Source: Octopus sinensis (taxonomy: Eukaryota). From it: a stretch of 64,000 nucleotides of DNA. The translations under genes and the position numbers were made by a program. Position 1 is the stretch's first letter. The number at the start of each line of letters is the position of its first letter. The DNA lies in contig NC_043002.1 in assembly GCF_006345805.1 (NCBI RefSeq), positions 106,020,001 through 106,084,000 on the forward strand, given 5' to 3'. Below the pieces are notes generated by a model. The model was given only the letters and a program-made list of their open reading frames with translations. It did no database searches and had not been told where the DNA came from. This document shows positions 4,726-53,569 of the stretch, piece by piece.

Positions 4726-6233
4726 CGAGGGGCGTTCAATAAGTAATGCCCCTGACCCACTTCCCATAGCAGTAGAGCAACGAAACTTGGCACAGTTATT
4801 AGTCTTTTTCTACATAGAAACCACCCAGAGTTACGCATTTCTACCATCATTTGATGCAGCTCTGGAGACCGTTTTTGTAGAAGACTCCAGCTTGGTCCTC
4901 CAACCACGACGTGACGTCAGAAATCAAGGCCGCATTCTGTGCCGTATGAATATGTCCTTCGTTTAAGAAACACATTGGGTTTACTTACATTTGTGAAGAA
5001 AAAAAGATAACCCCACCCCCTAAATCTAAAATAGATTGAAATGCAATAGATCGATACTAGGGTCATAATTATAGGTGTCATGAAATTGTCACCCATAATT
5101 ATGACCCTAGAATCGATCTATTGCATTTCAATCTATTTTAGATTTAGGCCGCATCATCTGGGAAACGCTTTCCTTTCAAAAACAACTTCATGGCTGGGAA
5201 GAGGTGAAAATCCGAGGGTGCAAGGTCAAGAGAGTAGGGGCATGGGGGAGGAGTTCATAGCCGCACACCTGTGCTTCTGATCTGGCGACCATCGAGTTGT
5301 GGAACGGAGCGTTGTCCTGCAGGAGGAGGATGCCTTTGCTGATCTTGCCCCGCCTCTTGATTTTGATAGCTTCTCTTAATTTCATCAAAAGTGAAGCATA
5401 ATAGGCTCCTGTAATTGTGGTACCCTTTGCCAGGAAATCTGTCATCACTACTCCGTCCTGGTCCCAGAAGACTATGAGCATGACCTTGCTAGTGGAGGGC
5501 TGCACCCTTGCCTTCTTTGGAGGAGGTGAGTCACAGTGCTTCCACTGCACTGACTGGGCTTTTGTCTCTGGATCATAGTAATGGACCCAGGTTTCATCCT
5601 GTGTAATCAATCTTTTGAAAAATGTTGACTCATCTTGGCACATCTCCAAATTCATCCTCGAGCACTCGACGCATTCTTGCTTCCGGAAAGGTGTGAGCAA
5701 CCTGGAAATCCATCTGGCAGACACCTTTTGCATATGCAAATGGTCATGAATGATTGGTTTCTACAGACCCGGTACTAATCTTGACCTCATGGGCTATTTG
5801 CTGAATAGTTATGCGTCGATCTTCCAAAATGGCAGCCTCAACTTGATGGACAGATGCCTCATCAATAGCAGTAGGGGGCGACCAGATCTGGGAGCTGTTT
5901 CCACAGAGTTCCGACCATGTTTGAATTCACAATGCCAGCGTTTTACAAGGTCATATGATGGGGCATTATCACCATAAGTTACTTTCATTTCATCAAAAGT
6001 CTCCCGTGGTGTGCGTCCTTTCAAATATAAAAAGCGGATCACTGCCCGACACTCAACAGGCTCCATTTCACACTTGACTCAGTTCAAACACCTGTAAATC
6101 AGAAACCACAATTAGTTCAGAGCTGTAATTTACCACTTAATCTATAGAGATATAGATAATTGCACATGCAAAATTTCAGCTAGATCAAACAACTGCAAGT
6201 GGGTCAGAGGCATTACTTATTGAACGCCCCTCG
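4726..6233 (-). mobile_element. Full-length defective mariner (Tc1/mariner, DD34D-type) DNA transposon
   Basis: 37-bp TIRs with 1 mismatch (CGAGGGGCGTTCAATAAGTAATGCC[C/T]CTGACCCACTT at 4726-4762 and 6197-6233), flanked by TA on both sides, enclosing a transposase remnant. Confidence 0.95.
4799..6066 (-). pseudogene. Mariner transposase pseudogene
   Basis: N-terminal HTH region (MEPVECRAVIRFL...RSGRP), WISRLLT (WVPHEL-like motif), catalytic ITQDETW and LLQDNAP, and a frameshifted PYSLDLAPSDF motif. C-terminus ...FYVEKD*. At least three frameshifts, two internal stops near the C-terminus and a 216-bp insertion at 4933-5148. Confidence 0.92.
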
Positions 6234-16330: not shown

Positions 16331-19300
16331 ACAACATAGAATTTCTGTCCTTTTTCTGCATATCAAGCACAACCATTTCCCTGATGGTAATAGAGTCCTG
16401 TCTTCTTTTTAGCTGGCTAAAACTTATTTTTGTTAGATTTACTTCAAGAATTTATGATTCTAGGCTTTGTTTCTGCATTTCAAATTTTTTTCTAAATTTC
16501 TGGTAAATCAAGTGATGAGAACTAGGTCAATAGCATTCAGGAGTTTGTATGTACAACCAGCCTTAAACTTCTATTAAGGCTGAGAGAACCACAACAAACT
16601 GTTAAAAGAAAATTTAGTTTAAGGAAGTAAGAGAATCTCAAAGACACCCTGCAACTACCATTAAGGTGTGAAATATTTGTTTAACCATTAAATAAGTCTC
16701 TTTTATATGGCAATGCTCCAACATGATGTTCGCCATGCTTAAAAAAGAGTAATTAATGAACACCAAGCTTTAGTTTTTCAGTCTTTTGTTATCTTTTTTA
16801 TATATTCTATCAAAGTCAAGTCCATGCAGCAAGCAATACCACCTTAACAGTTGCCTATTCTGTATTTTTAGTTGTCTTCCTGCATATCTAGTCATTTTGC
16901 TGGGTTTGCAGAGTATTCCTAGTTGATCGATTAATGAATTGATCGAGGCAGCTCTACTTTGGGTGTAGCATTTTGGTTATTCCTGTTATGTTAGAAATAT
17001 ACTTAAATATTTTATCAAAAATTCTTGGTCAACTTTAGGCCTGTTTAATAAACTTCACAGGTGAAAGTGGTACAATTCTCTGTGTATCTAGGCCCTCAAT
17101 TCTTGATGGAGTCATATGGTACTGTCATGACAAATGGCATGTCTGGGAACATATTGAGAACTACCAGAGATCATCTTTTACCAGGTCTGAATATAGCTGA
17201 ATTTTTTTCCAGTAAGAGATAGAGGAATGATACTTTATCAATCTGAAAAGCAAAGTAGACTCACAGTGCAGAGAGTCAAAACATATAATGCTAGGCAATG
17301 TATATACTGTTTTAAAGACTTGGCCAATTCACCACCTTAATTGTACAATTACAGAACTTAAAATATTGAATTGTTGCCACCCTGATACAAGAGTTTAAGA
17401 AAGCAAGTGTTGAGATATGACTGATACTCCCAATCCTCTTATGTTTTTCTGCCTCCTATGCCAAAGTTTGTAACAGGAATTTTCAAAAGATAAGAGACAT
17501 AATGGTCTGAATTGTTTTAAGTAGCTGTGTAGCTTGTAGCCATGATTACCATCATCTATACAACTGCACTGCAGATATTAAGGGATAATTATGATGATGA
17601 TACTAGTAACAAAGGTCTGTGTGTGTGTGTACATATGCACATCTGTGTTTGTTGAGGCCCAGAGTATCTGAGGTGTGTACATCTGCTTGGAAAAATGATT
17701 CCTGGAACGATGATGATGATGTGAATTCAGTACATTCTTGAAGTTATATACACACATACTAACTCACACCACACGCAAAACACTCTCTAAAAATGTTTTG
17801 GTTGTTTCTGATTTCATAAATATCATCCTTTTACTTTGTAGGTGAGTGTATGTGTCTCGTTTATGTGTATACATGAAATATCAGTATATGTATAGTATTT
17901 GGAAATGTGTGTATCTTTATATATGTGAGATACACATACATACGAGTGTCTGTGTTGCAGGTGTGTGTATTTATGTGTATTTACTTCTGTTTATACTAGG
18001 AAAATCAGAAGGCTTCTACACATATGTCTGCCTGTGTGTATATACCAGGCTGCTTTGTTATGCATGCACAGGCCAACTACATGCATACTCACATACATTC
18101 ACACACTCTCTCATTCACTCACTTACTCACACATACACACCTACACACAAGAGTCTGTGTGCAAATATGCGTATACAAATTATAATGTATGTGTGCGTAC
18201 ATTCAGGTGAGCCTCTGTTTGTATTTGCTCCAATGTGTTGTGTTCCCCACCCCAAATCAACAGCTCACCAATTCCTTATATGGCAATATGACAGATCTGA
18301 ATAGATTTCCGACATGTTAGGTTGTCTGGAACACACTTTGGCATCCATCATTGCTCTGTTGATGTTGTATATACATTAAGATATATATATATACACCAAT
18401 ATGTGAGTATCTCATATTTTACATGAGATGGGTGTATAGTTGGTAAAATCTATACTACAATAAGCATCCGTTTTTGGTATGTAGTATAAATGTGTGTGTG
18501 TGTGTAGAAATTTCCTCTGAATTTTTGTGATGTGGAATTATTACTTTACACTAATATATTCAGGTTAATGTCAACTTGATTCTTATAATCACAGTGTTTT
18601 GGCCACTGCATTCTCTGGCCTTGTTTAGATGCCACCCATATTCAGTAATATTCTTGGAATTTGAAACTAAACTTTTATTTAGCTCACTGGAGAAGATTGT
18701 TCTCATTCTGTTGTCCATACCAGGGGTATTGTCTAATGCACTTGTGTGGCAGCTAGTTCATTATTCTTGAACCAGGGTGTATGTAAATTGACTGACCAAA
18801 GGATCAAACTCACACCTACTAGCTAACATAAACCAATAAAAGTTTTTAACTGTAGTATAGTGATTAGACAAGAGTTCCATCCCTGGATTGTTTACACTAT
18901 ATATACTCTGACTGAAGCCTACATTGCCACTTCAGTAGTTATCTTGCTTGTAATGTACTGAGAATATTTACCATAGGTGCAGATAGTCATAACTCTCTGG
19001 GGACCCACATAGCTGTATTCTCTGGTGGAGTCTTGGTTCTGCCATGCTGATGTATGGTTGATTAGCATGAGAGTTGATCTTTAAAAAGGGGACACAAAAG
19101 GTGATAGTATTTGATGTGTCATAAATAGATATACAGATAAACATTACCAACATATGATTTACCGTTGTGTATTTATAAAATATGTGAGTTTATGTGTCTA
19201 CATATGTATGCATATTTGTACATGCACGTGATTGTAAGTATATAAATGTTTGTGTGTCATTCCTTGGGCAAGTGTCTTCTTGAGCTCATACCAACACTGT

Positions 19301-27000: not shown

Positions 27001-29495
27001 TTTTAGCATGTCAAGCAACCATGTACAACTTCCCTCAGACATTTAGTTTTGAATCTTAATGGTAACTCACATTTTTATTGCTGTTGAGACTGGCATGACC
27101 ATCACATGTATCAATGCCTTATATATTATGGGGACTCCTCAGCTTTATTCAGCATTTAATACTCTTAAGAGAGCCTGGCAAATCAAGCCATGGTGGCATC
27201 TTAATATTCCTTCGAAATTATTTCAATGATATTCCTGTTTGATGTTATCTCCCTTATTCTCTCTCCATTGTGTATCTTTAAACCAATGATTGACTTCTAC
27301 ATGGATGAAACAGCAGCAAAATCACTTTCAAATAATGTGTTTTAAGTATGGAAAAGGCACATTAGATGGTCATAGCTGGAATGCATTTGAGCATAAAGTT
27401 TGCTGAATCTAGCTAAATAGTAACAATAAAAGATACATTGAACCATATAGTCCTTGAAACATTATGACTAAACAACGAGATGGTCATAGCAAGGACTTTG
27501 ATAATAAGGCTCCTTAATGAGAGCTGGGATTATACAACAGCATGTGTTTCTGAATCATTGAGATATCATGTTCCACTCTTTCTACATTAGGTTGGAACAT
27601 AATATAATTTCTCTATACAATAGGGAAGTTAGAATTTAGTGATCATTCAGTTGATTGCATCTATGTGGGTAGTGTGTGTATACATACATGTATTTAACTT
27701 CTATATAGATGTTATTTTCATGCCAATTACAAAATTCATAACAATTTTTGGAAAAATTAACTATAAAAATGTTACAAACTTTCAAAGGACATTAAAAAAA
27801 AATTCAACCACAAATGGCTACTCCCTTTGTTTCTACCATGAGTATTTCAGTTAAGCTACCTACTTATTGGATTATAATGGAAGTGGCTTAGTATTCCACA
27901 TGTATATCCATTATGGAATCCACAGTAGAATCAGCAAGGCTGACTATCTGAATTACACATGCAGTCCATTTATCAGGTTTCCAAAAAGTTTCCACCTCAC
28001 TTTTATGCAGTTTTGGTCAATCCATGGTATGTTAGAAGTTACATGTGCATGAAGTCACATGGGGAACTCAAGGACTTCTTTAAAATACTTGATTATGCCA
28101 CAATAGACAATCATTGTTTCAATATCTACTTTTTTTTAATGCTTGCATGAGCCCCACAGAAATTATGATCTTGAATAGAGAAGGGCTCTCTCTGATAAGT
28201 TTAAACCCCACAAGACATATTCATGAATCTGTCTCCATGATTGCACCAGGAGTTAAAGAGCAAAACGAAAGAAGGATGAATAAATTATATAAACACAGCA
28301 TACACACTCATAGACACTGATATGTTGAGGGTGTTTACCCCTTAGATAATATTTCTTTAAAATTTAGATTTACTTATCTGTAATTGTAAACGTTACTTTT
28401 AACTACCATTGCCATAATGACTACCATCAGCCCACTCAATAACAACATAAACACCTACTTATTACTCTAACCTTGTAATCACCCACACCTGCTATTTCTC
28501 TCTCTTATTTCCTGTTTCTTCAGACACACACACACACACACATTTACCTGTCCTGTCAGCTACGACACCATGACCAGTGTCAATGTCCTAAGCAGTTCAG
28601 CTATTCTGTTATTGACAATCAGTTACCATCACCATCATCACTATTAACACAGTCAACGCAAATAGATCATCCATAACTACCATCTTGATCCACTCCTCAC
28701 TATTACAACTACCAGTAGTGGTTAGAATACTACTACTAGACACAAGGACAGCATCCCTACGTGGTCGTTTGACTTGCTATATATAGCAGCCATATCTGCA
28801 GCAAATCACTCTTTATACTTTTAAACAAGGATATATTGAACAATGCATTCCTTAGTATATAAAAAGAATGTGATTTAAAAAAAATTTTAATGGTTTCAGT
28901 CGTGGAACTGCGGTCATGTTAGAGCACCGCTATTCTGAGATTTCTTTGACCATATATTTGTTCATTCAAGGTTGACTTAGGGCATGCCAACGAAGTAATC
29001 TTGTTAGTAATAGCAAGTACGACTATCTCAAAGTGCACCGAACTCTTTCATGAAAAGAGTACATGGCATAATGTAGAGTGAATGAAAAAGGATGGATGGT
29101 CATAACTAGAATGCCTTTGACCATAGGCTTACTTGTTCAGGATTAACTTGCAGTTAAATATTCACAGCAATTACAATTACTACCATAAACAAGCACTACT
29201 ATTTTGTTCGTACGTATTACTACGACTACTACCACTATCATCACAACAACCAGAACTTGAAAACAAAAATATTTTCAAGGAGTGTTAATGGGGCTGTTTT
29301 CTAATCTCCCTAACCGACATGCTGACCACTGGTCGTCTCTTCTCCACCCCTAATACACCCCAGCCACTATTCATCTCTGCTACCGCCAAGACTGACCCCA
29401 CCCCAGCCCAAAGCTATTCTAACCACATCTATTCTACAAAAACAATTTATTCATCTTTCACCCCTCACTACAATACCATTCAGTCCAGTTTTTGA

Positions 29496-29500
29496 CCAAT
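29496..29500 (+). promoter_or_regulatory. CCAAT box in a putative internal promoter region upstream of the candidate alternative first exon
   Basis: GACCAATAG lies ~325 bp upstream of ATG 29824 in locally CpG-retaining, non-repetitive sequence. A single short motif is weak evidence. Confidence 0.2.
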
Positions 29501-29823
29501 AGAATTAAAGGTCCAGTTGGCTGATTAGGAATAATCTTACTTATATTTTTAGGTGTGGCCCCTTCCCTTTCCCCCATATATCACATGGTACAATCCCGTA
29601 GCCTTTTCATTCCGTCCAAATACTTCTACCTAGTTGCTTTATCCATCCAACTATTTTGTTCTTTTTTTTCCTCTTTTTCTCTCCATATATTTTGTAGAAA
29701 ACGCGAAGATTTATATACATATATTTTTTAAGTTGAAACTAAAATATCGAGAACTGAGAAGGCTTTCAAACATTCTGATATTATCGACAATTCGGTATCC
29801 TGTGATAAAAAAAAGTCAGGTTG

Positions 29824-30612
29824 ATGGAAACTATTAATAAGGAACCAAACCACCACACGAGTGCTGAAGCTACTTCTAGTGGAACCCAGACTTTCCCACA
29901 AGGTGTGGGCCACCCGGCTTTACCAACACTCAGACATAACACTCAAGAAGTAACAAGGGATAGAATGCCAGATTCTTTCCCATTCAGAGTCCGAGATGAG
30001 AAGAATAATTCGCAACCAATTGTTGTTGTTACACAGGTACAATCCCAGTTACCATTAAATACCATGCTAGGGTATCATGAACCAAGGCCAAGTGGTTACA
30101 CGTCTAACGTAATGCTACCTCCTCCGCCACCTCCACTTCCATCACAGTCACCCCAAACAACAACGACTCCATCAGCAAGTGCTGTTCCTCTTCCACTTCC
30201 CGTTAGCATGGATAGCAACGTTTTACCCATGAGAACTGACCCTACGAGACGAGTTAACTTCCATCAGAACCCTCTGTTCGTAACTCCTAATTGCGAAACT
30301 ACATATGGAGCCATCCCAGCACCAGTTTCACTCTACCCTCGGTTACCAATCTCGGACGATAACGCAGGGATGACTTTCGGATTTCCCCGACCCGTTCAGA
30401 TGATGCAACCGCCTCCTCTGATGTTGGGCAACGACTATGCTCTCCCAAGCCCTCTCATCGACAATAAGCCCTATCTCGTTCCTACTCCGATGCCGGAACT
30501 ACCCCACCAACTCCACCCTACTGCTAGTGGCGGCGCTATTCTATCCAGTCCTATACTGAGCTTACCCTCTAACCCCTCCTCTATTGCCACATCTCCATTA
30601 CATCAACATGCT
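29824..30612 (+). CDS. Candidate alternative first coding exon of the Musashi gene (263 codons, Pro/Ser/Thr-rich)
   Basis: Longest ORF in the window and not microsatellite-derived (METINKEPNHH...MLPPPPPPLPSQSP...SPLHQHA). An in-frame TAA lies upstream (29806-29808). The ORF ends at GCT|GTAAGT, a perfect donor in phase 0, matching the phase-0 acceptor of exon 41504. It has 29 CpGs in 789 bp. Confidence 0.65.
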
Positions 30613-30977
30613 GTAAGTTGAAAGTTTACCTGTCTTTCTAACAGATTATATTAATATTTGCTACTCATAATTTTTTTTAAAAATTTTTCTTTTCTTCATA
30701 ACCCTTTTGCATGGGTTGATCCCGTTGTATCCAGCTTCTTATTAATTAACCCACTTCTTGTTGATTTTATTTTAAGACTGAATGAATAATGAGGCCAATG
30801 CTAAATCTCAAATTTGGCATATGTCTGTATGTATGAAGCGTATGTGTTCGTCTCTATTTCGTTTGGAAAATTTTACCAGCATTTCTGTCGACCAGTTTTT
30901 TTTTCAACTATTTTTATTGTTCACGGCAAATCAACGCCAGACTTTCTTACACACACACACACACACTATATATATAT

Positions 30978-31015
<38 letters not shown>

Positions 31016-32680
31016 ATGTACTTGCGTTCGTTCTTGAAGTGTATTTAATTCAAACAGCCATGTGTGACAACATATATGCAATATATTTATACTCCACTGA
31101 CAAAAAATCGGGAAGCATGAAACAATAGAAGCAAGGAGAATCTCGGTTTAAACAAATATATCACATGTAATATTATCTTACACTCTCGCTTACAAACTTG
31201 TACATACATACACAAACACATAATATATAACGTGCACTCACACATGTGTATTCACATGGAATATATATGCCGTGTGTTTACTCGTGCGGATAATGTTATC
31301 AATACCCTCTAGTTAAGTCGTCAATTACAATTTTCCACTAATTAATAGTTTTTACCTCATTGATTATCACAACCTTACCATATATGGCAGTACTATTAAT
31401 TGCACCACCACCACTACTACTACTCCAACCACCATACATATCTGATTATATACACCAAGCTTCCCTCTCCAACAACAATCTATGGCTTATTTAAATTCTT
31501 TCTTCTCAGATCTAGTTCCAGTGTGTTTTATAGTTTTTAATCAATAAACAAATTTGGCATATTATTTTTATTGCTGTTATCATTGAAATCATTATTATTG
31601 ATGTTAGAAATCATTATTATGGTAATTATTATTGTCATTATTATCATTACTATTAATAGTAGTAGTATATTGATCATCAGCTGTTATACCCAGTGGAACA
31701 AAAATCAGATTAAAAAGAAATGCACACTTTAATGTGTGTTATTGATTTCTAAGTTAGATATAAGGCTGTAGATTTTAGGGAAAGGTAACAGTCACTTATA
31801 TAATAGTAAACTATTAGGTACATGACTTGTACATTTTTACTTCTCTCAAATGGCATTTTTTTTTTTTTTACAAAACTGTGCCTCTCACCACCTGATTTTA
31901 CTTCTCTATAAACTTTATAAAATACGTATTTTCCAGTGAAATTTCTTTGCAATACATTTTAGATAATGTAGATAACAATTATATGAAGGAAAAAAAATTG
32001 AAAACTTTTTTTAAATATCCCCACTCCGACTTTCCATCCTTCGTTAAATGCATATTTCTTATTGATTTTTCCGAGATACGTTTTTGGGGGTGTAGATTAT
32101 GATTATCCTGGTACTACTAGCGCAAGCTAGTCGTAAGTAGTCGATCCTACAACGACTTGCTCGTATGTTTGTATTTCAAGGCTGAATACATATCAAAGAA
32201 AATGAAATAATATTTTTTGAGCAAAGTAAATAATTTTTTAACCTAAGTAAATAAATTATTTTTAAAATTTGGGTGGGGGACATGGAATTTCGAATAGTTT
32301 CATCCCCAACTACCCGGAAAGGAAGAAACATTCATTGCTTGTGCTGTAACTTGAATCACTCACCACCTTTTTGTTTTTGCTCAGAGAAATTCACTGAAAT
32401 AAATTTTTGTGCAATGCTAAACAATTTCATTATTCAATACATATTACATAATTATGCTGGCAAAGTTTTCCGTAAAAAATACAGTGATTGAAGCCGGGAG
32501 GAATTATCCGAAGCGCCTCCAAAACAGAAACTTTATTTTTCGAACTTCGTCAAGGATGTACCTATATCTTTTTTTAAAAAATAACATGCATTTTACAGAA
32601 AGATGAGGAAATAGACCAACAGTGGATAGGCTTCAGTAATTATACCCTTCTCAAAATTACTAATACCCGACGCCACGGCT

Positions 32681-32827
32681 TCACGAAGGAATAATGTCGC
32701 CATTGAAGCTTAGACCTTCATCTCCAAATTTAAAGCGCAAGGCAGTATTAGGAAGATTCTTTTTAATCTCAACTGAAGTGTTACTGTCTGAAGAAACCGA
32801 AGAGACGGCACCAGTATCAATCAATTG
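32681..32827 (-). pseudogene. Possible retropepsin (retrotransposon aspartic protease) fragment
   Basis: 48-codon stop-to-stop frame QLIDTGAVSSV...LRFKFGDEGLSFNGDIIP, with a DTGA active-site-like motif and an FKFGD flap-like motif. Confidence 0.35.
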
Positions 32828-33014
32828 TTAGAATTATTAAGTAATTATGAAAACAAAATAACGGAAGCGGTTCATATAAGCTGAACTCCTCAGTTTTTTC
32901 CTCGTGCACCAAAAAGCAGACGACACATTTGCAGTAACAAAGAATACAACAAATACTTGTGTTTAATGTCTCAGCTAATCTTACTTATCAGTTAATTGCT
33001 AGAATTATTAAGTA

Positions 33015-33252
33015 ACTAGCAGTATAGCCCAGCATTGCTCGGGCTTGTTTTCTTTTCGACCCTTTAGAATTGGAATTTTTGAAAAGTAAAAATTTTGTAT
33101 TTATGTAGCTTGTTATTCTCTTTTCTGGTTGAAATACACCGAAAAATGGCGAAACAGCAGTCAAAAAATCGTAAAAAAATAGGGATTTTCATAGAAAAAA
33201 AAGCACCTTTTTGTTGTAAATAATTTTTGGTGTTAACATGGTCCGATTTGAA
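33015..33252 (-). mobile_element. Helitron-type 3' end fragment, reverse orientation
   Basis: Reverse complement ends ...GCCCGAGCAATGCTGGGCTATACTGCTAGT (subterminal hairpin plus CTAG). The inverted homologue is at 34249-34454. Confidence 0.7.
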
Positions 33253-33285
33253 TACTGTCTATTTATCCCTATCCGTTTATTCATA

Positions 33286-34454
33286 TCTATCTATATCTCT
33301 ATATCTGAAGCAGGGTAAAATTTGAAAAATTTAAAATTTGGGAGAAGGGGATGTTGAGGTGGGGGATTTTAAATTTGGAAAAGGTGTTTTTTAAAAAAAT
33401 TCCGAAAAATTCCACCGGGCGGGGGTGGATTTTAAAAAGTGATTTTTTTTTTTGCATATTCGTAATCTCCAACATCTAAAACGTAGAAATCATAAAAAAA
33501 TTCTTTAAAAAAAAAAAAAAATATGCATTTTTCAAGGAGAGGTGCGATTCTGCATTAGTCCCCAAAGTAGTCCTACATATCACCAAAAAAGACTGAATGG
33601 TGCCGGCTGTAATGCCTTTGATTATAAATCTGCGAATCTGTGCCGTCATGGGCGCCCCAGAACGAAATGTCACTGTGTGTGTGTGTGTGTGTATAAAACA
33701 TTTTATCGAATTCGAGAAAAAAATGTCACAAGAATATTTCAATAACTGGCTTAATGTTTTTTGGATGGAATTTTGGAAGAGCTGTTACCACAGAGGATGG
33801 GAGCAAAATGTAAAAATAAATTTTTTTCAGAATCGTAATTACCGCTATAAAAAATGGCGTGGGGAAGAGAAATCACTCAATTCCTTGGCTCCGTTTGCAT
33901 TCTCATTTAAAGATATTGAATAAAATGGTAGTTATTTTAATATATATATTGTTGTAAAGTTTTCAGTTAAGTGATGTAATATTATTCAATTAAATAATAT
34001 TACATTTCTTTATTTGTAGTAATTAAATGAAACAAGATAACGAAAACTGTGACCGTTTTCCATTCACTATTTTATTATTTATTCATGGTACGTCTCCTGT
34101 TAAAGAGCCATGACCTATTTATTATATCGATCATGTTTGGTAGCCTTCAACTAACAAACACTATCTCCTTCGAGACCCTGAGGCGCAAGTTGACCAAAAT
34201 TGAGAGTATGATAGAAGAAGGCTTGCTCTTCCTCTCGCAGAAGAAAAAATTCAAATCGGACCATGTTAACACCAAAAATTTTCTATGAAAATCCCTATTT
34301 TTTACGATTTTTTGACTGCTGTTTCGCCATTTTTCGGTGTATTTCAACCAGAAAAGAGAATAACAAGCTACATGATGCAAAATTTTTACTTTTCAAAAAT
34401 TCCAATTCTAAAGGGTTCGAAACAAACCCGAGCAACGCCGGGCGATACTGCTCG
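33286..34454 (+). mobile_element. Probable non-autonomous Helitron (~1.17 kb)
   Basis: Begins in TCTATCTATATC-like sequence and ends with the hairpin CCCGAGCAACGCCGGG followed by CGATACTGCTCG (CTAG variant). Its first ~850 bp recur inverted at 35191-35985. Confidence 0.55.
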
Positions 34455-35190
34455 TTATTAAGTAATTATGAAGAAAATAACAGAAACGGTTCATAGAAGC
34501 TGAGCCCCTCAGTTTTTCTTCGAGCCCCAAGAAGCAGACGACACGTTTGCAGTGACAAAGAATACAATAAATACTTGTGTTTAATGTCTCAGATAATCTT
34601 ACTTTTGAACAGAATATGCACATTCTCCAATTATTAAGAAATAATTAATTAAGAAACAAAAATTTCCATCGACTAACCTTATTTAAATTAATCTTCCTTG
34701 CTTTTAGTTTAGATTCAATCGATCCATTACTAACCTCAGCGAAGCTCGGATTAGGCACTGCACCCCACACACCTCATGGGAAATCTTTTACATTTAAAAA
34801 ATTCTTTTTATTTATTATCACTGATATTATTTTTTATAGTATTCCTGTTTCAGATAACGGAAATTACAATCGATTCTGAAAGCAAATTCTCTTTCAAAAT
34901 TTCAATTTTTTTTTTCTATTTACCCCCTTCCTTCCTCCTTTACTCCTGTAACTTTTTCATTTCCTATGAGGTATGAGGCATCTTCATCCAAAACACAGAC
35001 CATGGCTTCTTAATTTTATTTATTTATTGTTTTCGATCTCAGAAGTATGAAAGTTTAAGTGGACATCGGCGACACGAAGATTCATGCATTACAACTAAAT
35101 ACTACATGAAATTTTGTCCCTTCTCTTATCATTCATAATTTCATCAAATTGGTACGATTATATCCCCCAATACGTTTCTATCAGCCTCTT

Positions 35191-35990
35191 AAACATGATC
35201 GATATAATAAATAAGTCATGGCTTTTTAACAGGAGACGTACCATGAATAAATAATAAAATAGTGGATGGAAACGGTCACAGTTTTCGTTATCTTGTTTCA
35301 TTTAATTACTACAAATAAAGAAATGTAATATTATTTAATTGGATAATATTACATCACTTAACTGAAAATTTTACAACAATATATATTAAAATAACTACCA
35401 TTTTATTCAATATCTTTAAATGAGAATGCAAACGGAGCCAAGGAATTGAGTGATTTCTCTTCCCCACGCCATTTTTTATTTTTACATTTTGCTCCCATCC
35501 TCTTCCAAAATTCCATCCAAAACACTTAAAGCCAGTTATTGAAATATTCTTGTGACATTTTTTTTCTCGAATTCGATAAAATGTTTTATACACACACACA
35601 CAGTGACATTTCGTCCTGGGGCGCCCATGACGGCACAGACTCGCAGATTTATAATCAAAGGCATTACAGCCGGCACCATTCAGTCTTTTTTGGTGATATG
35701 TAGGACTAATTTGGGGACTAATACAGAATCGCACCTCTCCTTAAAAAATGCATATTTTTTTTTTTAAAGAAATTTTTTATGATTTCTATGTTTTAGATGT
35801 TGGAGATTACGAATATGCAAAAAAAAAATCACTTTTTGAAATCCGCCCCCGCCCGATTTAAGATTTTGGACTTTTTCGAAACTTTTTAAAAAAAACACCT
35901 TTTCCAAATTTAAAATCCCCCACCTCAACATCCCCTTCTCCCAAATTTTAAATTTTTCAAATTTCACCTTGCTTCAGATACAGTGATATA
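35191..35990 (-). mobile_element. Inverted copy of the 5' ~800 bp of the 33286-34454 element
   Basis: Colinear reverse-complement match, e.g. AAACATGATCGATA...GGAGACGTACCATG at 35191 versus CATGGTACGTCTCC...TCGATCATGTTT at ~34085-34138. Small indels; roughly 90% identical by eye. Confidence 0.85.
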
Positions 35991-35991
35991 T

Positions 35992-36374
35992 ATATTTATA
36001 TATAAAAGTCAAGTTGTGTGTCTGTCTCCTACGATTTAGATTCCTAACTACTCCCACATTTTGCGGTGCAGTTTAACCAAAACCGGGTATCTTATAGTCG
36101 TGATTCATATCGAGCCCTTCTGGGTATTAGCGTGAGTCTACGATTTAAAAAAAATTTACCATCATTTTTTCCATTTTAATGCATTTTTTCGCTATTATAT
36201 AAGGGAAGTAACTCTCTAAAAATGTCTACGATGAGTCAACGATTTAAAAAAAATTTACCATAATTTTTTTCCCATTTTTAATGCATTTTTGCTATTATTT
36301 GGCTATAACTCTCTAAAAATGCTTATATAGTTATTTCCCTTACAAACCCGAGCAACGCCGGGCGATACTGCTAG
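35992..36374 (+). mobile_element. Non-autonomous Helitron, family B (copy 1)
   Basis: 5' TATATATAAAAGTCAAGTTG, 3' hairpin CCCGAGCAACGCCGGG (36347-36362) then ...CTAG|T. Contains an internal duplicated CTACGA...TTTAAAAAAAATTTACC unit. Confidence 0.8.
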
Positions 36375-37315
36375 TATATATATATATAATAATATATATG
36401 AATAAACGGATAGGGATAAATATACAAATAAATAAATGGCTGATAAAGTTCAAAATGTAAAATTGGGGGAGTGGGTTGATATTTACTAAACTTTACGTAG
36501 GAATCGGAAAAATTTGTTTCCAAAAATGCATTTTTCAAGAAGTGCAATTCTGCATTAGCTCCTACATTGTCCAGACAAATGTAAAGAATGTGGACCGCCC
36601 CCTCCCTTTTTTTTTTTTTTTTTACAGAATCCCCCATTTTCGAATACGGAGATTCTGATTCTGCAAAAAAAAAACAAAAAAAACGGCATTTTAAAATTTT
36701 GATACCCCTACCCCAATTCTTCAATTTTCACTCTTTTTAAATTTAAATTTTACAAAATTTTTTTTTTTTTTCAGAAAAAAATTTGCTGAAAAAAGTGAAA
36801 ATTGGGGGAGGGGGAGTTTAAATTTTTAAATGACGATTTTTTTTTGCAGAATCCGAATCTCTGTACTAGAAAATGGTGGATTCTGTAAAAAAAAAAAAGC
36901 AAAACGTCTGCCCATGGTCCAATCAGTTAAACTTTTACTTAAAAAACCCTAATAGCGTGATTTGGTTGTTATTTCTAAAAGGTTGTTGAATTTCGATCAT
37001 CAAACTTTCTGAATGACACGCCAGAGAAAAAAAGGTAGGTCTGTCTGCTCCATCAAAGCTAACCTGGAAGAACATAATTTACAATAAACACGGTTCTTGA
37101 ACATGGCCTTGGCGGTGATGACGAAAGTAAACAAAAGAATTTATATAAAATAATAAAAAAAAAAAAAAAGCTACTAAGGTGATAATGTCAAATTTCCTAC
37201 AGATAATTAAACTTTTACTTGTGCCAACTTGTTGACGATGGCCATGCTGTGACATTGCCAATGGGAAGAAACATGTAATTGATAAATTCGGAAGTTTTTT
37301 TAGTAATTTTTTGCG

Positions 37316-37690
37316 TACCAACCACATGGTTCCGAGTTCAGTCCCACTGCGTGGCACCTTGGGCAAGTGTCTTCTACTATAGCCTCAGGCCGACCAAAGC
37401 CTTGTGAGTGGATTTGGTTGACGGAAACTGAAAAGAAGCCCGTCGTATATATGTATATATATATATGCGTGTGTGTGTCTGTGTTTGTCCCCCTAGCATT
37501 GCTTGACAACCGATGCTGGTGTGTTTACGTCGCCACCTAGCGGTTCGGCAAAAAAGACCGATAGAATAAGTACTGGGCTTACAAAAAATAAGTCCCGGGG
37601 TCGATTTGATCGACTAAAGGCGGTGCTCCAACATTGCCGCAGTCAAATGACTGAAACAAGTAAAAGAGTAAAAGAGAGAGTAAAAGAGTA
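37316..37690 (+). mobile_element. tRNA-derived SINE (family 1), 5'-truncated young copy
   Basis: Near-identical to the copies at 43258, 43939 and 52833. Has a GTTCAGTCCC B-box-like motif, an internal (TA/TG)n linker and an (AAAAGAGT)n tail. Confidence 0.9.
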
Positions 37691-38160
37691 TACATTTTTT
37701 AACAAATTTATATTCTGGTGAGGTCGCCTTTGCTTTTCATTCCCTCGGGGTCAATAAAATAAGTACCAGATGAACACTGGAGTCGATCTAATCGACTTAC
37801 CCACTGTTCCGAAATTGCTGGCCTTGTGTCAAAATCTAAAATCAATATTAATCAATAACCCCCCCCCCATATGTATGTTTGGTTTATCATTCTTTACTGC
37901 CTTAATACCGGGTATCTTTCAGTTTCGCATCTTGTCAACGTCAGTTTGCGCGAAACATTTTTACACAAAGGACGTCGGTTTATTTGGCGGGCGAAAAAAA
38001 TGTAATGTCTTACTTCATTAAATGGTTTTAACAAAATATATTAAGACCAACGTTGTTTAGTGATTCATCTGCATTGCTTTTCTATTACACTGACATTCTG
38101 CAGTGCTTCAAGCACACTACATCACTAAAGTGCGTGTATATGTGTGTTTGTTATATTAAG

Positions 38161-38488
38161 TATATAAAAGTCAAGTTGTGTGTCTGTCTTCTACGATTTA
38201 GATTCCTAACTACTCCCACATTTTGCGGTGCAGTTTAACCAAAACCGGGTATCTTATAGTCGTGATTCATATCGAGCCCTTCTGTTTTAATGCATTTTTT
38301 CGCTATTATATAAGGGAAGTAACTCTCTGAAAATGTCTACGATGAGTCAACGATTTAAAAAAAAATTTACCATAATTTTTTTTCCATTTTTAATGCATTT
38401 TTTTGCTACTTTTTGGCTATAACTCTCTAAAAATGCTTATATAGTTATTTCCCTTACAAACCCGAGCAACGCCGGGCGATACTGTTAG
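38161..38488 (+). mobile_element. Non-autonomous Helitron, family B (copy 2, internal deletion)
   Basis: Near-identical to 35992-36374 but lacks ~55 bp after GAGCCCTTCTG. Same 3' hairpin; ends TTAG|T. Confidence 0.8.
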
Positions 38489-39229
38489 TTAAGTATATAA
38501 AACTGTGTGTGACTTTGTTACAAACAAGGGCAGCATCAACGTTCCAAAGTGGAATAAAAAAGATTTATTGAGGAAGAGGAATAATTTAATGGCCTGGATA
38601 GAATCCTTCATCAGAAGGAAGGGAGTGATGGTGCCTAATGGCTGGCTTTCTACTTGTTTCCACTAACTACTCACAGACTATCGCTAGTTCCCTCGTAAAA
38701 AATAATAGCCCATGAGAAGAAAGAAAGAAAAAAATTAATATGTTGCCAAGTTAAATACTTTTAACTTGCATATTTGTGTGAATTCGTGTAGATATTTGTA
38801 AATGTGTTTTCGTATTTGTATAATTGTATGCGTCTAAATGTGTTTTTGTACGTTTGCTGGTATTTATTTCTATGATCTTGCTCACGTATTTATGTCTTTA
38901 TATTTGTACATTTGTACAAATATTTGTACATTTGTACAAATATTTGTACATTATTTTCTAATTATTATCGATTTAATCTCATTAATTACTAAATAATAAA
39001 ACCCAACTTAGTTTAGGTGACAGTTATATAACCTCTCAGGTTAATTATTCCTTAATCTGTTTATACTGATAAACCTAACCAGATTATTAATGCAGTACAC
39101 TTAAACACGATATCTATACATGTTTGTGTTCATATCAGTAATTTACACCTATAGGAGTTTAACATGTGATTTACTTATTTACATGGATAATTACATCCGT
39201 TTGTATTTACATTGGTTATTGGGAATGTT

Positions 39230-39486
39230 GGCAATCTTTCGTCTCTAGTAGACCTTTCCGTCGATTTCCGAAAAAAAATTTTTTTTTACATATGGGCTTG
39301 CGGGAACTTTTGAAGTAATGAGAGCGAAAGAGACTAAGAGAAAGCGATTGTATGACGAGGGAAGTTCTTTTGAAGTTACCGTGCATGGGAGCATTGATGT
39401 ACATGTGTGTGTGTTTGATGGGGTGTGGGAGACAGACAGTATGTTGTGTAATCGACGGAAAGGTCTACTAGAGACGAAAGATCGCC
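39230..39486. mobile_element. 257-bp MITE with 37-bp TIRs and 8-bp TSD (Merlin-like)
   Basis: TIRs GGC[A/G]ATCTTTCGTCTCTAGTAGACCTTTCCGTCGATT (39230-39266 and 39450-39486, 1 mismatch), flanked by GGAATGTT at 39222-39229 and 39487-39494. Confidence 0.85.
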
Positions 39487-40094
39487 GGAATGTTTGTATT
39501 TACATTGTTAATTTACACGTTTACAATGCGTTTAGGTTCATTTACACCTTCATGTGTTTACATCTACGAGTGCTTGTGTTCTCTTTGTTATGTATTTTGT
39601 GTATACCTCGGTCGCCATTTTCATGTCTTCTTATTTTACTTTATAACGTAGCAATCTGTTTATCTTTGCTTATTCACTATATATATTTCATTTTTGTAGG
39701 CCAGTAGTTTATTTTAAAAGTACTAATATTAAGTGATAGGAGAAAAACCCAAACTAGACTCAGGTACGCTCCATCAATTTATGTCTCTCCATGTGACTGG
39801 AAAGGTTTGGATCAAACCGTAATTGTCGTAGAAAACATTTGCTCAATGAGCTGTAGAGTGGGATTGAACTCAAGACCTTTCAAGAGGATGTTGAAGCAAT
39901 CTTCTTAACCACTTTACCATATCTTGTACTTTTATGTGCCCATGCCAGGGCACTGCTATGAAGCGTTTAATTACACAAATAGACCCATGTACTTGAAAAT
40001 TAAGCGTGATACTTAACGGTGTCTTTTGTTGGACTGCTAAGTTAAGGGGACGTAACTCAGACAATCCAACACTGCCCAGTTACAATTGGGGACA

Positions 40095-41503: not shown

Positions 41504-41596
41504 ATGGTGACCCGTACAAAGAAAATATTTGTTGGTGGATTATCAGCATCTACTACTGTTGATGATGTCAGAAATTACTTTAACCAATATGGCAAG
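41504..41596 (+). CDS. msi: Musashi-family RNA-binding protein, exon encoding the start of RRM2 (RNP2)
   Basis: TTTTTCAG|ATG...GGCAAG|GTAAGC; 93 bp, phase 0-0; [31 protein letters not shown]. Matches in sequence and exon boundaries the vertebrate MSI1/2 exon [31 protein letters not shown] as recalled. Confidence 0.97.
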
Positions 41597-43648: not shown

Positions 43649-43877
43649 TTAACTTTTTTTGTGAACCATATTTTCCTTGAAATACACCTTTGTTTCAGTG
43701 GATTTCAGAAATAATGAAGAATATAGTGAAATGACTCTGTCATTATTAACAAATGTTCAGAACATAAATTAACATGAAATTTTAATAGAAAACTTTAATT
43801 TATATTACTTAAAAATCAGGAAGTTTGTACCAGAGAACCAGAGTTAATTTTGGAGAGATTAGTATCAAAAGGGTTAA
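43649..43877. mobile_element. TTAA-flanked MITE, family B (copy 1)
   Basis: TTAACTTTTTTTGTGAACC ... GTATCAAAAGGGTTAA. Internal homology to 47643-47856. Confidence 0.6.
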
Positions 43878-43938
43878 GTCAGAATTTTAAGGATGGATGC
43901 AATTTTCACATACACGTGTATATATATATATATATATA

Positions 43939-44100
43939 GGCGCAGGAGTGTCTGTGTGGTAAGTAGCTTGCTAACCAACCACATGGTTCCGGGTTCAGTC
44001 CCACTGCGTGGCATCTTGGGCAAGTGTCTTCTGCTATAGCCCCGGGACGACCAATGCCTTGTGAGTGAATTTGATAGACGGAAACTGAAAGAAGCCTGTC

Positions 44101-44148
<48 letters not shown>

Positions 44149-44340
44149 CTGTGTTTGTCCCCCTAGCATTGCTTGACAACTGATGCTGGTGTGTTTACGT
44201 CCCCGTCACTTAGCGGTTCGGCAAAAGAGACCGATAGAATAAGTACTGGGCTTACAAAGAATAAGTCCTGGGGTCGATTTGCCCGACTAAAGGCGGTGCT
44301 CCAGCATGGCCGCAGTCAAATGACTGAAACAAGTAAGAGT
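43939..44340 (+). mobile_element. tRNA-derived SINE (family 1), full-length young copy
   Basis: Same consensus as 43258; inserted directly after a (TA)n tract and followed by (TA)n. Confidence 0.92.
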
Positions 44341-50582: not shown

Positions 50583-50631
50583 GTTGAAGATGCTATGCTT
50601 ATGTTTGATAAAACTACAAACAGACATCGAG
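50583..50631 (+). CDS. msi: Musashi-family RNA-binding protein, RRM2 internal exon
   Basis: CCTCTCAG|GTTGAA...CATCGAG|GTATGT; 49 bp, phase 0-1; VEDAMLMFDKTTNRHR(G). Near-identical to MSI1/2 VDDAMLMFDKTTNRHRG, with the same exon size as recalled. Confidence 0.97.
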
Positions 50632-51492: not shown

Positions 51493-52832
51493 TCACAGAT
51501 GATTTACCTGAGAGAACAATTTTCTCATCCGTTTATCACTAGAAAAACCATAATCAAGTACTCGTTACTCATATGGGAGAGCATGAGTCACAGGAGAAGA
51601 GAGTTTGAAAGGGAGTTAAAAAATTAATTTTGTTGCTTTTGTAAGATAATCTATGTCAAGAATAATAATGGTTTCAAATTTTGGCCCAAGGCCAGCAATT
51701 TGAAGGTAAGGGATTAATCAATACCATTGACCCTTAGTATTTTATTTTATCAACCTTGAAGAGGTGAAGGGTAAATCTGACTTCAGTGTAATTTGAACCA
51801 AGAAGTGTCAAGAACTAGAAGCAACACTACAAAATATTTTTAACATATTTTTCTGACTTTCTAACAAATCTGCCAGCTCGCTACTTCAACCACCCTCGTA
51901 GTTAATAATAATAACTGATACATACACAAGGCCTCACTGATGGGGTCTGGTTGTCAACTATATTAATCTCTGTATTTGATTCTATTTATCAGCTTTGGGA
52001 GAATTTTTTGATATTTTAAAGTATTTTTGCATCATTTGTTCAGAGGGGGAAAGGCAGACCCTATGGCTCTTTTTAGGGTCCCTGACACTGGTTGTAGGAA
52101 AGGAGTAAGTTGTTTTCACATCAGAGACCAATCCTAAATCATTGCAATGAAGTGGACATTGTTAGAAGTACCCAGGATCCAGGTGATCTTGTTAAACCAG
52201 GCATCAGAGTAAATCTACCACCCAGAACCAGAACTTCTTTCAACAGGCTTTCACAGTTTCCATTTAACAAATTTCACTTACAAAATTTTGGTTAAGCTGT
52301 GATGTGAGACACTCAAGGTGCAACATGCTGAGGATTGAACCCAAAATTATGTAGTTATGAAGCATGTTTTTTTACTCACACTACTACACCCGTCCACCAC
52401 TTAGTAAAACCAAGTGGAATTTGAATTCTGAACATATAGACATAACTAAACACAAAGTATTTAAAAGAATTACTCTTTAAAATGAAAAAGGTACTTGAAA
52501 TAATGTCATAATTTAGGGCCATAATGTGCCTTAATAAGACATGACTCTTGTAGATGAATGCCTCTAATCAAGGTTTATTGTCTGTAATAGTGCTGCCAAC
52601 TTGGAGTAGTACTCTACTAGTGATTTCTAACAAGAGCACACAAGAAACAGCAAAGTTTGGTGGGATGTACATTAGATTTAATTGTCCCAAATACTTCAGT
52701 GATATTCTATTTCATCAATCCCTGAAGGATGAAAGACAGTCCACCTCAGCAGGATTTGAACTAAGAATGTAAAGGAATATAAATACTAACTAAACATTTC
52801 TTCCAATTTTACCTGATATATATATATATATA

Positions 52833-53227
52833 GGCGCAAGAGTGGCTGTGTGGTAAGTAGCTTGTTTACCAACCACATGGTTCCGGGTTCAGTCCCACTG
52901 CGTGGCACCTTGGGCAAGTGTCTTCTACTATAGCCTCGGGCCGACCAAAGCCTTGTGAGTGGATTTGGTAGACGGAAACTGAAAGAAGCCCGTCGTATAT
53001 ATGTATATATATATATGCGTTTGTGTGTCTGTGTTTGCCCCCCCCCCCAGCATTGCTTGACAACCGATGCTGGTGTGTTTATGTCCCCGTTACTTAGCGG
53101 TTCGGCAAAAGAGACCGATAGAATAAGTACTGGGCTTACAAAAGAATAAGTCCCGGGGTCGAGTTGCTCAATTAAAGGCGGTGCTCCAGCATGGCCGCAG
53201 TCAAATGACTGAAACAAGTAAAAGAGT
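52833..53227 (+). mobile_element. tRNA-derived SINE (family 1), full-length young copy
   Basis: Same consensus as 43258 and 43939; preceded by (TA)n. Confidence 0.92.
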
Positions 53228-53569
53228 ATATACACACACACACACACACACAGTGTTATAATGAGGATTAACAAGAAATACTATTGGAAGCTTTATTTGC
53301 TATTCTTTGCATATCATGTGACCATATAGCTGTTCTCTCATTGGTTTGATCACCCCTCTCCTTTTGTCCTAAATGGAAGATGGTCGAGTCTTATTTTTTT
53401 CTAACTGTGCTTTATGAATTTATTAAAACATTGCATGGTTTGTCTATCTGTGTGTGTGTGCGTGTGTCTTTGTGTTTGGATTAGCCAGGTGTGTCTGGTA
53501 ATGTCTGTATTCTATGTTAACTGCAGATAAATGAGCAATGGCTCCAGCTGACGTCAGTACAATGTATCA

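What the first reader, a model, noticed from the sequence alone, without database searches (positions are those of the whole stretch)
29824..30612. Candidate alternative first exon giving a Musashi isoform with RRM1 replaced by a 263-aa proline-rich leader
Seen: a non-repetitive 263-codon ORF with an in-frame stop upstream. It ends exactly at a perfect GT AAGT donor in phase 0, and the next recognisable exon (41504) starts in phase 0. Splicing would give ...PLHQHA|[14 protein letters not shown].... The ORF has 29 CpGs in 789 bp, versus about 5 in a similar-length intronic stretch (17401-18180). Known: Musashi proteins have two RRMs, with RRM1 the main determinant of UAG-motif binding, and this intron position separates RRM1 from RRM2. 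Inferred: an internal promoter makes a single-RRM Musashi with a disordered N-terminus carrying PPPPPPLP/PxxP motifs (possible SH3/WW/EVH1/profilin ligands). It could act as a competitor or altered-specificity isoform, perhaps lineage-specific.
Basis: partly seen in the sequence, partly recalled or inferred. Interest (0 to 1): 0.8.

Follow-up and report, generated by a model that had tools for sequence, protein, structure and literature searches.

The report
Conserved orphan coding exon, Musashi intron
A 789-base reading frame upstream of the second RNA-binding-domain exon of an octopus Musashi gene is kept open and in frame in a second octopus species, so it looks like real, fast-evolving coding sequence with no relatives elsewhere, but whether it is spliced onto Musashi as proposed could not be tested here.

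Summary
There is a unique 263-codon ORF at 29824-30612 with an in-frame TAA 18 nt upstream. It ends at GCT|GTAAGT in phase 0, and the Musashi RRM2 exon at 41504 starts in phase 0.

New evidence shows the ORF is probably coding. A related octopus contig keeps it intact at 78% amino-acid identity. All five indels in the ORF are 3 nt, against 11 of 39 in the flanks. pN/pS is 0.52 against a neutral mean of 0.85, and the simulated chance of staying stop-free is 0.046.

The ORF has no other homologue among 15 billion proteins, no Pfam domain and no predicted fold.

The splice to Musashi is untested. No usable transcript data exist here, and no database protein joins the leader to an RRM.

- The CpG excess is not specific to the ORF. 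It belongs to an 11-kb CpG-undepleted domain.
- No RRM1 exon lies in the window.
- Most PxxP motifs are not conserved.
- A conserved acceptor-like site (31510) and AATAAA (31543) allow a self-contained gene instead.

Verdict: a lineage-restricted coding exon. The Musashi alternative 5' exon is the leading model (about 0.45) and is unproven.

The parts
29255..29605 (+). Conserved non-coding block upstream of the ORF. It is a candidate promoter or 5' leader and holds a CCAAT at 29496-29500.
   Evidence: About 90-91% identity to the relative, with no indel in 29400-29599. Identical runs of 47, 39 and 33 nt. Function is inferred, not shown.
29733..29823 (+). Untranslated leader directly upstream of the ATG. 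An acceptor-like (Y)n-AG ends at 29732 in both species, and the in-frame TAA is at 29806-29808.
   Evidence: The 2-nt and 1-nt indels relative to L001 lie here, so no reading frame is conserved upstream of the ATG. 239 nt are ATG-free in the window.
29824..30612 (+). 263-codon ORF encoding a Pro/Ser/Thr-rich protein with no predicted fold. The constrained core is residues 37-200.
   Evidence: It is intact in the relative, has five 3-nt indels, pN/pS 0.52, and no homologues or domains.
30613..30641 (+). Donor GTAAGT (30613-18) and stop TGA (30619-21), followed by identical downstream sequence.
   Evidence: A 35-nt run identical between species spans 30607-30641, while the last 60 codons of the ORF are diverged.
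31496..31570 (+). Rival 3' end: acceptor-like TTCTTTCTTCTCAG|ATCTAG (exon would start at 31510 and read Ile-stop in phase 0), then the first AATAAA after the ORF (31543) with a T/GT-rich tail.
   Evidence: It lies in a 100%-identical 100-nt run inside the conserved block 31270-31860. Use as a splice or poly(A) site is not shown.
28500..40000 (.). CpG-undepleted (presumably germline-unmethylated) domain that contains the ORF at its 5' edge.
   Evidence: CpG o/e is 0.5 rising to 0.8-1.3, against 0.03-0.3 on both sides, with a sharp edge at 40.0 kb. The same holds in the relative's contig. Methylation itself is inferred.
41504..41596 (+). Musashi exon (start of RRM2, MVTRTKK...NQYGK), phase 0 at both ends, with a strong acceptor.
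   Evidence: 100% identical to O. vulgaris CAI9723882.1.
50583..50631 (+). Next Musashi exon (VEDAMLMFDKTTNRHR+G).

Best explanation
The ORF is a genuine, octopod-restricted protein-coding exon upstream of the first RRM2 exon of an Octopus Musashi (Msi/Rbp6) gene, in the long intron that by homology follows RRM1.

Most likely mechanism:
1. Transcription starts, or an upstream non-coding exon splices in, within the conserved and unmethylated block at about 29.2-29.8 kb.
2. Translation starts at ATG 29824.
3. The GCT|GTAAGT donor at 30612/30613 is joined in phase 0 to the constitutive acceptor at 41504.
4. The product carries a 263-aa disordered leader in place of RRM1, followed by RRM2 and the Musashi C-terminal region.

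With a single RRM, such a protein should bind UAG-type sites with shorter residence time and lower specificity than the tandem-RRM form. It would therefore act as a modulating or re-targeted isoform.

Shown: ORF, donor, phase, conservation of the frame, orphan status, CpG domain.
Inferred: the promoter, the splice itself, translation and function.
For: Coding constraint:
- The relative's ORF (P0001, 260 aa, 78% identity) is intact over full length.
- Five of five indels in the ORF are 3 nt, against 11 of 39 multiples of three in the flanks, which gives 0.28^5 = 0.002.
- In a neutral simulation with the flank substitution spectrum, the chance of no stop is 0.046, and pN/pS <= observed (0.52) occurs in 2.2% of runs.
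- Synonymous against non-synonymous changes: Fisher p = 0.0017.
- The core, residues 37-200, has pN/pS 0.28-0.5.
- Indels of 1 and 2 nt occur in the 92 nt just upstream of the ATG, which marks where coding starts.

Donor:
- GTAAGT occurs at 0.28 per kb, yet sits exactly at the last codons of the ORF.
- It lies inside a 35-nt identical run, while the adjacent coding end is diverged.

Fit to Musashi:
- The phase matches the next exon, a 1-in-3 chance otherwise.
- The last 63 codons evolve almost neutrally (pN/pS 0.76) but keep the frame through two 3-nt indels, as a linker to a downstream domain must.
- The same intron hosts alternative coding exons in oyster, vertebrates and a squid-like transcript.

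Promoter-like setting:
- The ORF is at the 5' edge of a conserved CpG-undepleted domain.
- Octopus genes with methylated bodies lack methylation at the TSS or in the first part of the gene (PMC9476566).

Single-RRM consequence:
- Tandem MSI1 RRMs give longer residence time and specificity than either RRM alone (PMC11542179).
Against: - There is no transcript evidence of any kind.
- The only related sequence reads straight through the donor. It is colinear with 6.5 kb of the window, begins in an (AT)n microsatellite and has no poly(A). Its contig numbers run to 2.7 million. It is probably genomic DNA, so it says nothing on splicing.
- No protein among 5.8 billion clusters joins the leader to an RRM, and no annotated Octopus vulgaris protein contains the leader.
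- None of the about 40 Musashi isoforms read in full, out of the 120 best hits, lacks RRM1.
- Twelve crude acceptor-like sites lie between the donor and 41504. The first (31510) is perfectly conserved and followed by AATAAA.
- Exon positions -3 to -1 of the donor (GCT) are non-consensus.
- Position -3 of the start codon is T.
- Constraint is only moderate, and only one comparison species was available.
Confidence: 0.45

Rival explanations
1. A self-contained, lineage-restricted (orphan) gene nested in the Musashi intron on the same strand. It would be either unspliced (protein ends ...HQHAVS, 3' UTR about 930 nt) or two-exon (30612^31510, protein ends ...HQHA-I). Polyadenylation would follow the AATAAA at 31543. 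It would encode a 264-265-aa disordered protein unrelated to Musashi.
For: - The same coding-constraint evidence applies.
- The ORF closes 2 codons after the donor in both species.
- The first strong acceptor-like site (31510) and the first AATAAA (31543), with a T/GT-rich downstream element, lie in a 100-nt run that is 100% identical between species.
- No homologue or domain links it to Musashi.
Against: - For the unspliced version, a perfect GTAAGT in the last three codons would be a coincidence of order 1e-3.
- The phase match to the RRM2 exon would be a 1-in-3 coincidence.
- AATAAA is expected about once per kb in this AT-rich DNA: 57 on the + strand in 64 kb, and 18 between the ORF and 41504.
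- About 20% of the 1.2 kb downstream lies in identical runs of 30 nt or more, so the co-location of AATAAA with a conserved run is weak evidence.
- Conservation continues 300 nt past the putative cleavage site.
- Same-strand nested genes are the rarer arrangement (general knowledge).
Confidence: 0.35
2. Not a functional protein. On this reading the ORF is a chance-open frame inside a cluster of conserved non-coding (regulatory) elements of the Musashi intron. It would be preserved in the relative because overall divergence is low.
For: - Substitution identity in the ORF (89.5%) equals that of the flanks (89.2% and 87.6%).
- Long identical runs are found throughout 29.2-31.9 kb.
- Only one relative is available.
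- The protein has no fold, no domain and no homologue.
- Each single test is only p = 0.02-0.05, apart from the indel test.
Against: - The three signals point the same way: no stop (0.046), pN/pS (0.022) and 5/5 in-frame indels (0.002).
- Frame-breaking indels begin immediately outside the ORF on both sides.
- The other five frames have 9-21 stops.
- dS (0.19) exceeds dN (0.093).
Confidence: 0.15
3. An internal cassette or 'poison' exon of the canonical Musashi transcript. It would enter through the acceptor-like AG at 29731-29732 and leave at 30612, truncating the protein after RRM1 or triggering decay.
For: - A polypyrimidine tract plus AG lies upstream of the ATG in both species.
- This intron carries cassette exons in other animals.
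Against: - Read from the RRM1 exon in phase 0, the exon hits a stop after 34 codons, so nothing would select for 263 open codons downstream.
- The frame upstream of the ATG is not conserved.
- An 880-nt internal exon would be unusual.
Confidence: 0.05

Closest known systems
N-terminally distinct isoforms of multi-RRM proteins that lose RRM1, e.g. PTBP3 (PMC4477659)
   Same: [quoted passage not shown] The shortened forms differ in RNA binding and localisation.
   Different: PTBP3 forms arise by exon skipping and downstream AUG use, and they simply lack sequence. Here RRM1 would be replaced by a 263-aa novel disordered leader encoded by its own exon, and the isoform is not demonstrated.
Alternative exons in the Musashi RRM1/RRM2 intron and the alternative MSI2 N-terminus
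   Same: The same junction, KAQPK|MVTRTKK, accepts extra coding exons: Ostrea edulis LTDLVQ...KRK, camel EYGIFDVIDEQ, and a squid-like transcript DSDSYDQTQVTLE. Vertebrate MSI2 also has an alternative first coding exon, MADLTSVLTSVMFSPSSK.
   Different: Those cassettes are 11-23 aa inserts that keep both RRMs. The MSI2 alternative N-terminus joins upstream of RRM1 and keeps it. None resembles the octopus leader.
Taxonomically restricted (orphan or de novo) genes nested in introns
   Same: No homologue outside a narrow lineage, disordered product, fast evolution (pN/pS about 0.5), single exon, location in a host intron.
   Different: The ORF ends on a perfect, conserved donor in phase with the host's next exon, which a free-standing orphan gene does not need.

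Membership tests
Musashi (Msi/Rbp6) RNA-binding protein isoform | Contains the Musashi RRM2 and downstream region encoded by this locus | tested here: met
   Exons 41504-41596 and 50583-50631 are 100% identical in protein to O. vulgaris Musashi homolog 2-like CAI9723882.1. This shows the locus is Musashi. It does not show that the leader is attached.
Musashi (Msi/Rbp6) RNA-binding protein isoform | Two tandem RRMs (RRM1 + RRM2) | tested here: not met
   The proposed product has no RRM1. The leader has no Pfam domain and no similarity to Musashi. None of the about 40 Musashi isoforms read in full keeps this architecture.
Musashi (Msi/Rbp6) RNA-binding protein isoform | Leader and RRM2 exon joined in one mRNA | not testable with these tools
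   No RNA-seq is accessible. No database protein spans the junction, and the database lacks octopus RNA-derived Musashi.
Alternative first (5') coding exon | Start codon with closed frame upstream, and a functional donor in phase with the next constitutive exon | tested here: met
   TAA at 29806. GCT|GTAAGT conserved in the relative. Phase 0 on both sides. That the donor is actually used is not shown.
Alternative first (5') coding exon | Own transcription start site or promoter | tested here: inconclusive
   There is a conserved upstream block with CCAAT, and the start of a CpG-undepleted domain. However, the TATA-like motif is not conserved, and a conserved acceptor-like AG at 29732 would make it an internal exon.
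Taxonomically restricted (orphan) protein-coding gene or exon | No detectable homologue outside a narrow lineage | tested here: met
   One hit only (P0001) in the word-indexed search of 5.8 billion clusters and in a full HMM scan of 1.84 billion representatives. The two other hits are bacterial repeat proteins. PDB and Pfam are empty.
Taxonomically restricted (orphan) protein-coding gene or exon | Reading frame maintained by selection in related species | tested here: met
   One relative only: intact frame, 3-nt indels only, pN/pS 0.52 against a neutral 0.85.
Taxonomically restricted (orphan) protein-coding gene or exon | Transcribed and translated | not testable with these tools
   No expression, ribosome-profiling or peptide data are available.
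Transposable element or repeat-encoded ORF | Multiple copies, or a match to a TE protein family | tested here: not met
   No second copy in the window. One cluster with a single sequence from one locus in the database. No Pfam hit.

The most novel reading that the evidence does not exclude
Octopods have evolved, from sequence with no detectable ancestry, a 263-residue disordered N-terminal module. An internal promoter in an unmethylated island of the Musashi gene fuses this module to RRM2. The result would be a single-RRM Musashi paralogue-by-isoform with new partners; a conserved LPPPP motif fits EVH1-type ligands. It would be a clear case of de novo exon birth re-wiring a deeply conserved stem-cell and neural RNA-binding protein.
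Probability: 0.4. Interest if true: 0.6.

Novelty: new member of a known kind. Interest (0 to 1): 0.4.

Why it matters
Musashi proteins are conserved translational regulators of neural and germline progenitors, and their two-RRM architecture is almost invariant. If the junction is real, a cephalopod-specific isoform swaps RRM1 for a newly evolved disordered domain. That would be a concrete, testable example of lineage-specific protein innovation in an animal group noted for unusual RNA biology, and it would bear on how single RRMs work outside the tandem context.

If instead it is a free-standing orphan gene, it is one more fast-evolving taxon-restricted gene. That is useful for annotation, because it does not appear in any annotated octopus protein held in the database, but it is not surprising.

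Either way, the ORF marks a conserved unmethylated regulatory island inside the Musashi gene.

Tried and rejected
1. Pfam on the ORF and on P0001: nothing.
2. Profile search of PDB sequences: one hit at E = 0.42, treated as noise.
3. AlphaFold2 on the 2-sequence alignment: pLDDT 45 and no secondary structure. This fits disorder, but the alignment is very shallow. No fold search was run, because the model is meaningless for that purpose.
4. HMM scan of 1.84 billion representatives: apart from P0001, only two bacterial repeat proteins (E = 4.5e-6 and 5e-4, repeated short stretches). Rejected as compositional matches.
5. Chimeric leader+RRM2 query to catch a spliced product: none found. The 132-bit Takifugu hit is an annotation artefact with a duplicated RRM2 exon.
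6. Exact-sequence look-ups of the window's own 265-aa product and of the O. vulgaris isoform: not on record.
7. Using the Logan contigs as transcript evidence: rejected. The four contigs are identical to each other and colinear with non-coding DNA, they start in a microsatellite, and they carry no poly(A). Their SRR accessions are cited in no searchable paper.
8. Similarity of the leader to Musashi's own C-terminal low-complexity region: none.
9. Search for RRM1 or cassette exons in the window, by tblastn with human, O. vulgaris and squid-like Musashi and by motif scans: none.
10. tRNA and Rfam scans as an explanation of the CpG-rich block: only a 5S-like element far away.
11. ORFs of 70 aa or more in 31.2-41.4 kb as further exons: they look like junk and repeats, and the three tested had no Pfam hit.
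12. The bacterial promoter/terminator scanner was not used, as it does not apply to an animal genome.
13. The third large protein search was left unused, because no remaining question depended on it.

Full report
**What is in the sequence**

The ORF is exactly as described.
- It starts at ATG 29824 and runs 263 codons to 30612. GTAAGT follows at 30613-30618 and TGA at 30619-30621.
- An in-frame TAA lies at 29806-29808.
- It is the longest ORF in the 64-kb window. The next longest is a 183-aa mariner transposase remnant.
- The other five frames of the same stretch contain 9-21 stops. With the local base composition, 263 open codons have a chance of about 2e-5.
- It is not repetitive and has no second copy in the window.

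**The host gene**

Only two Musashi exons lie in the window.
- 41504-41596 reads [31 protein letters not shown] and is phase 0 at both ends.
- 50583-50631 reads VEDAMLMFDKTTNRHR plus one base of the next codon.
- Their protein is 100% identical to Octopus vulgaris 'Musashi homolog 2-like isoform X4' (CAI9723882.1). That entry was found as a member of a 90% cluster.

The window is therefore from Octopus vulgaris or a close relative.

No RRM1 exon lies in the 29.8 kb upstream of the ORF. 'RRM1 replaced' is thus an inference from the conserved exon junction KAQPK|MVTRTKK. Cassette exons inserted at exactly that point in oyster, camel and a squid-like transcript confirm that it is an exon boundary.

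**Is the ORF coding?**

A search of 5.8 billion protein clusters gave one hit, P0001. It is 260 aa, 78% identical over full length, and comes from Logan assemblies of runs SRR11869384, SRR11869385, SRR11869390 and SRR11869391. Its contigs are colinear with window 28855-35400.

Substitution identity is about the same in the ORF (89.5%) and in its flanks (89.2% and 87.6%). Plain conservation therefore proves nothing. The pattern of change is that of a coding frame:

| Test | Result |
|---|---|
| Indels inside the ORF | All five are exactly 3 nt; 11 of 39 flank indels are multiples of three (0.28^5 = 0.002) |
| Indels just outside | 1- and 2-nt indels start within 92 nt upstream of the ATG and within 32 nt after the stop |
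| Nei-Gojobori | dN 0.093, dS 0.193, ratio 0.48 |
| Simulation: 81 substitutions with the flank spectrum | 4.6% of runs stay stop-free; mean pN/pS 0.85; 2.2% reach the observed 0.52 |
| Constraint by segment | pN/pS 0.28-0.5 in residues 37-200; 0.68 for the first 36 residues; 0.76 for the last 63 |

I put the probability that this is selected coding sequence at about 0.85. The main caveat is that there is only one comparison species.

**What kind of protein?**

- Pfam finds no family.
- No PDB relative turned up.
- A full HMM scan of 1.84 billion representatives found nothing beyond P0001 and two spurious bacterial repeat proteins.
- The composition is 18% Pro, 9.5% Ser and 9% Thr.
- AlphaFold2 gives pLDDT 45 and no secondary structure. 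With so shallow an alignment, this is only consistent with disorder.
- Of the eight PxxP motifs, only the PPPP run (as M-L-PPPP) and PSNP are kept in the relative. The SH3/WW ligand idea is therefore weak. A conserved LPPPP resembles EVH1 class I ligands, which is a resemblance from memory and not a test.
- The leader does not resemble Musashi itself.

**Is it spliced to Musashi?**

This could not be tested.

In favour:
- GTAAGT occurs only 18 times on this strand in 64 kb, yet it occupies the last codons of the ORF.
- It lies in a 35-nt run identical between species, while the adjacent coding end is diverged.
- The phase matches the next constitutive exon.
- The nearly neutral C-terminal third still keeps its frame through two 3-nt indels, as a linker to a downstream domain must.

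Against, or neutral:
- The relative's contigs read through the donor. They are almost certainly genomic: the four contigs are identical to one another, they start in an (AT)n microsatellite, they have no poly(A), and contig numbers run to 2.7 million.
- A chimeric leader+RRM2 query found no joined protein. The database holds no octopus RNA-derived Musashi at all, so this absence is uninformative.
- No annotated O. vulgaris protein in the database contains the leader.
- None of the about 40 Musashi isoforms read in full, out of the 120 best hits, lacks RRM1.

**A rival gene structure**

Between the donor and 41504 there are 12 crude acceptor-like sites.

The first is TTCTTTCTTCTCAG|ATCTAG, where an exon would start at 31510. 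In phase 0 it reads Ile-stop. The first AATAAA after the ORF follows 33 nt later at 31543, with a T/GT-rich tail. All of this lies inside a 100-nt run that is 100% identical between the species.

A self-contained one- or two-exon orphan gene is therefore a serious alternative. Its support is weak statistically. AATAAA is expected about once per kb here, about 20% of that region lies in long identical runs, and conservation continues past the putative cleavage site.

An acceptor-like AG conserved at 29731-29732 also means the ORF exon may be internal rather than first. Read from RRM1, such an exon would hit a stop after 34 codons, so a simple cassette reading does not explain the conserved ORF.

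**The CpG signal**

The excess is not ORF-specific.
- CpG o/e rises from below 0.15 before 28.5 kb to about 0.5 at 28.5-30 kb. It then stays at 0.8-1.3 until a sharp drop at 40.0 kb, through AT-rich non-coding DNA and young inverted and direct repeats.
- The relative shows the same pattern downstream of its ORF.

A conserved unmethylated island inside an otherwise CpG-depleted gene body therefore fits an internal promoter or regulatory domain. This is inference.

**Comparison with known things**

- Functionally, the proposal resembles N-terminally altered RRM-protein isoforms that lose RRM1, such as PTBP3 (PMC4477659).
- Tandem Musashi RRMs bind with longer residence time and higher specificity than either RRM alone (PMC11542179). 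A single-RRM form would therefore be a weaker or re-targeted binder.
- As a sequence, the leader is a taxonomically restricted orphan.
- It is not a member of the Musashi family architecture, because the two-RRM requirement is not met, and it is not a transposon ORF.

**Verdict**

| Model | Probability |
|---|---|
| Alternative 5' exon of Musashi | about 0.45 |
| Self-contained orphan gene | about 0.35 |
| Non-functional ORF within conserved regulatory DNA | about 0.15 |
| Cassette or poison exon | about 0.05 |

Interest is moderate at 0.4. It is a neat candidate that public octopus RNA-seq could settle in an afternoon, and it is not yet a discovery.

Noticed in passing
window 28500-40000 (also L001 1500-5000): An 11-kb block with CpG o/e 0.8-1.3, embedded in sequence with o/e 0.03-0.3. 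It has a sharp 3' edge at 40.0 kb and is conserved in the relative. Presumably it is a germline-unmethylated island inside a methylated gene body.
   Followed up: partly
window 31270-31860: Highly conserved non-coding block with identical runs of 41, 34, 40, 39 and 100 nt between species. It contains an acceptor-like site (31510) and AATAAA (31543). It could be an intronic enhancer or the 3' end of the ORF's transcript.
   Followed up: partly
window 33043-36006: Large near-perfect inverted repeat, with arms of about 33.0-34.1 kb and 35.2-36.0 kb that are 91-100% complementary. The relative's contig has a simpler, single-copy arrangement there, so this is a recent inverted duplication or foldback element.
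   Followed up: partly
window 35999-36375 and 38161-38489: Direct repeats of about 330 nt (87-99% identity) 2.1 kb apart, and a 99-nt tandem duplication at 36133-36321.
   Followed up: no
window 539-655 (-): Full-length match to 5S rRNA (Rfam RF00001, 56 bits, E = 4e-9) with a decayed sequence. It is likely a 5S pseudogene or the head of a 5S-derived SINE.
   Followed up: no
window 5188-5739 (-): Mariner-type transposase remnant (Pfam Transposase_1, E = 5e-23) in a locally CpG-richer patch (4-6 kb).
   Followed up: partly
window 37079-37366 (-), 43874-44179 (-), 52786-53274 (-): The same pseudo-peptide (...PRSGTEPGTMWLV..KLLTTQ...) recurs in three places next to TA microsatellites, which points to a dispersed short repeat family.
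   Followed up: no
P0002 (Takifugu flavidus 'RNA-binding protein'): A database Musashi entry carries the first RRM2 exon twice in tandem (LVTRTKK...FGK LVTRTKK...FGK). This is probably an annotation or assembly artefact.
   Followed up: no
P0003/P0016/P0067 (Ostrea edulis), P0055 (camel), P0125 (squid-like, JGI): Unrelated short cassette exons are inserted at exactly the KAQPK|MVTRTKK junction in three distant lineages. The RRM1-RRM2 linker intron seems to be a recurrent site of exon gain.
   Followed up: partly
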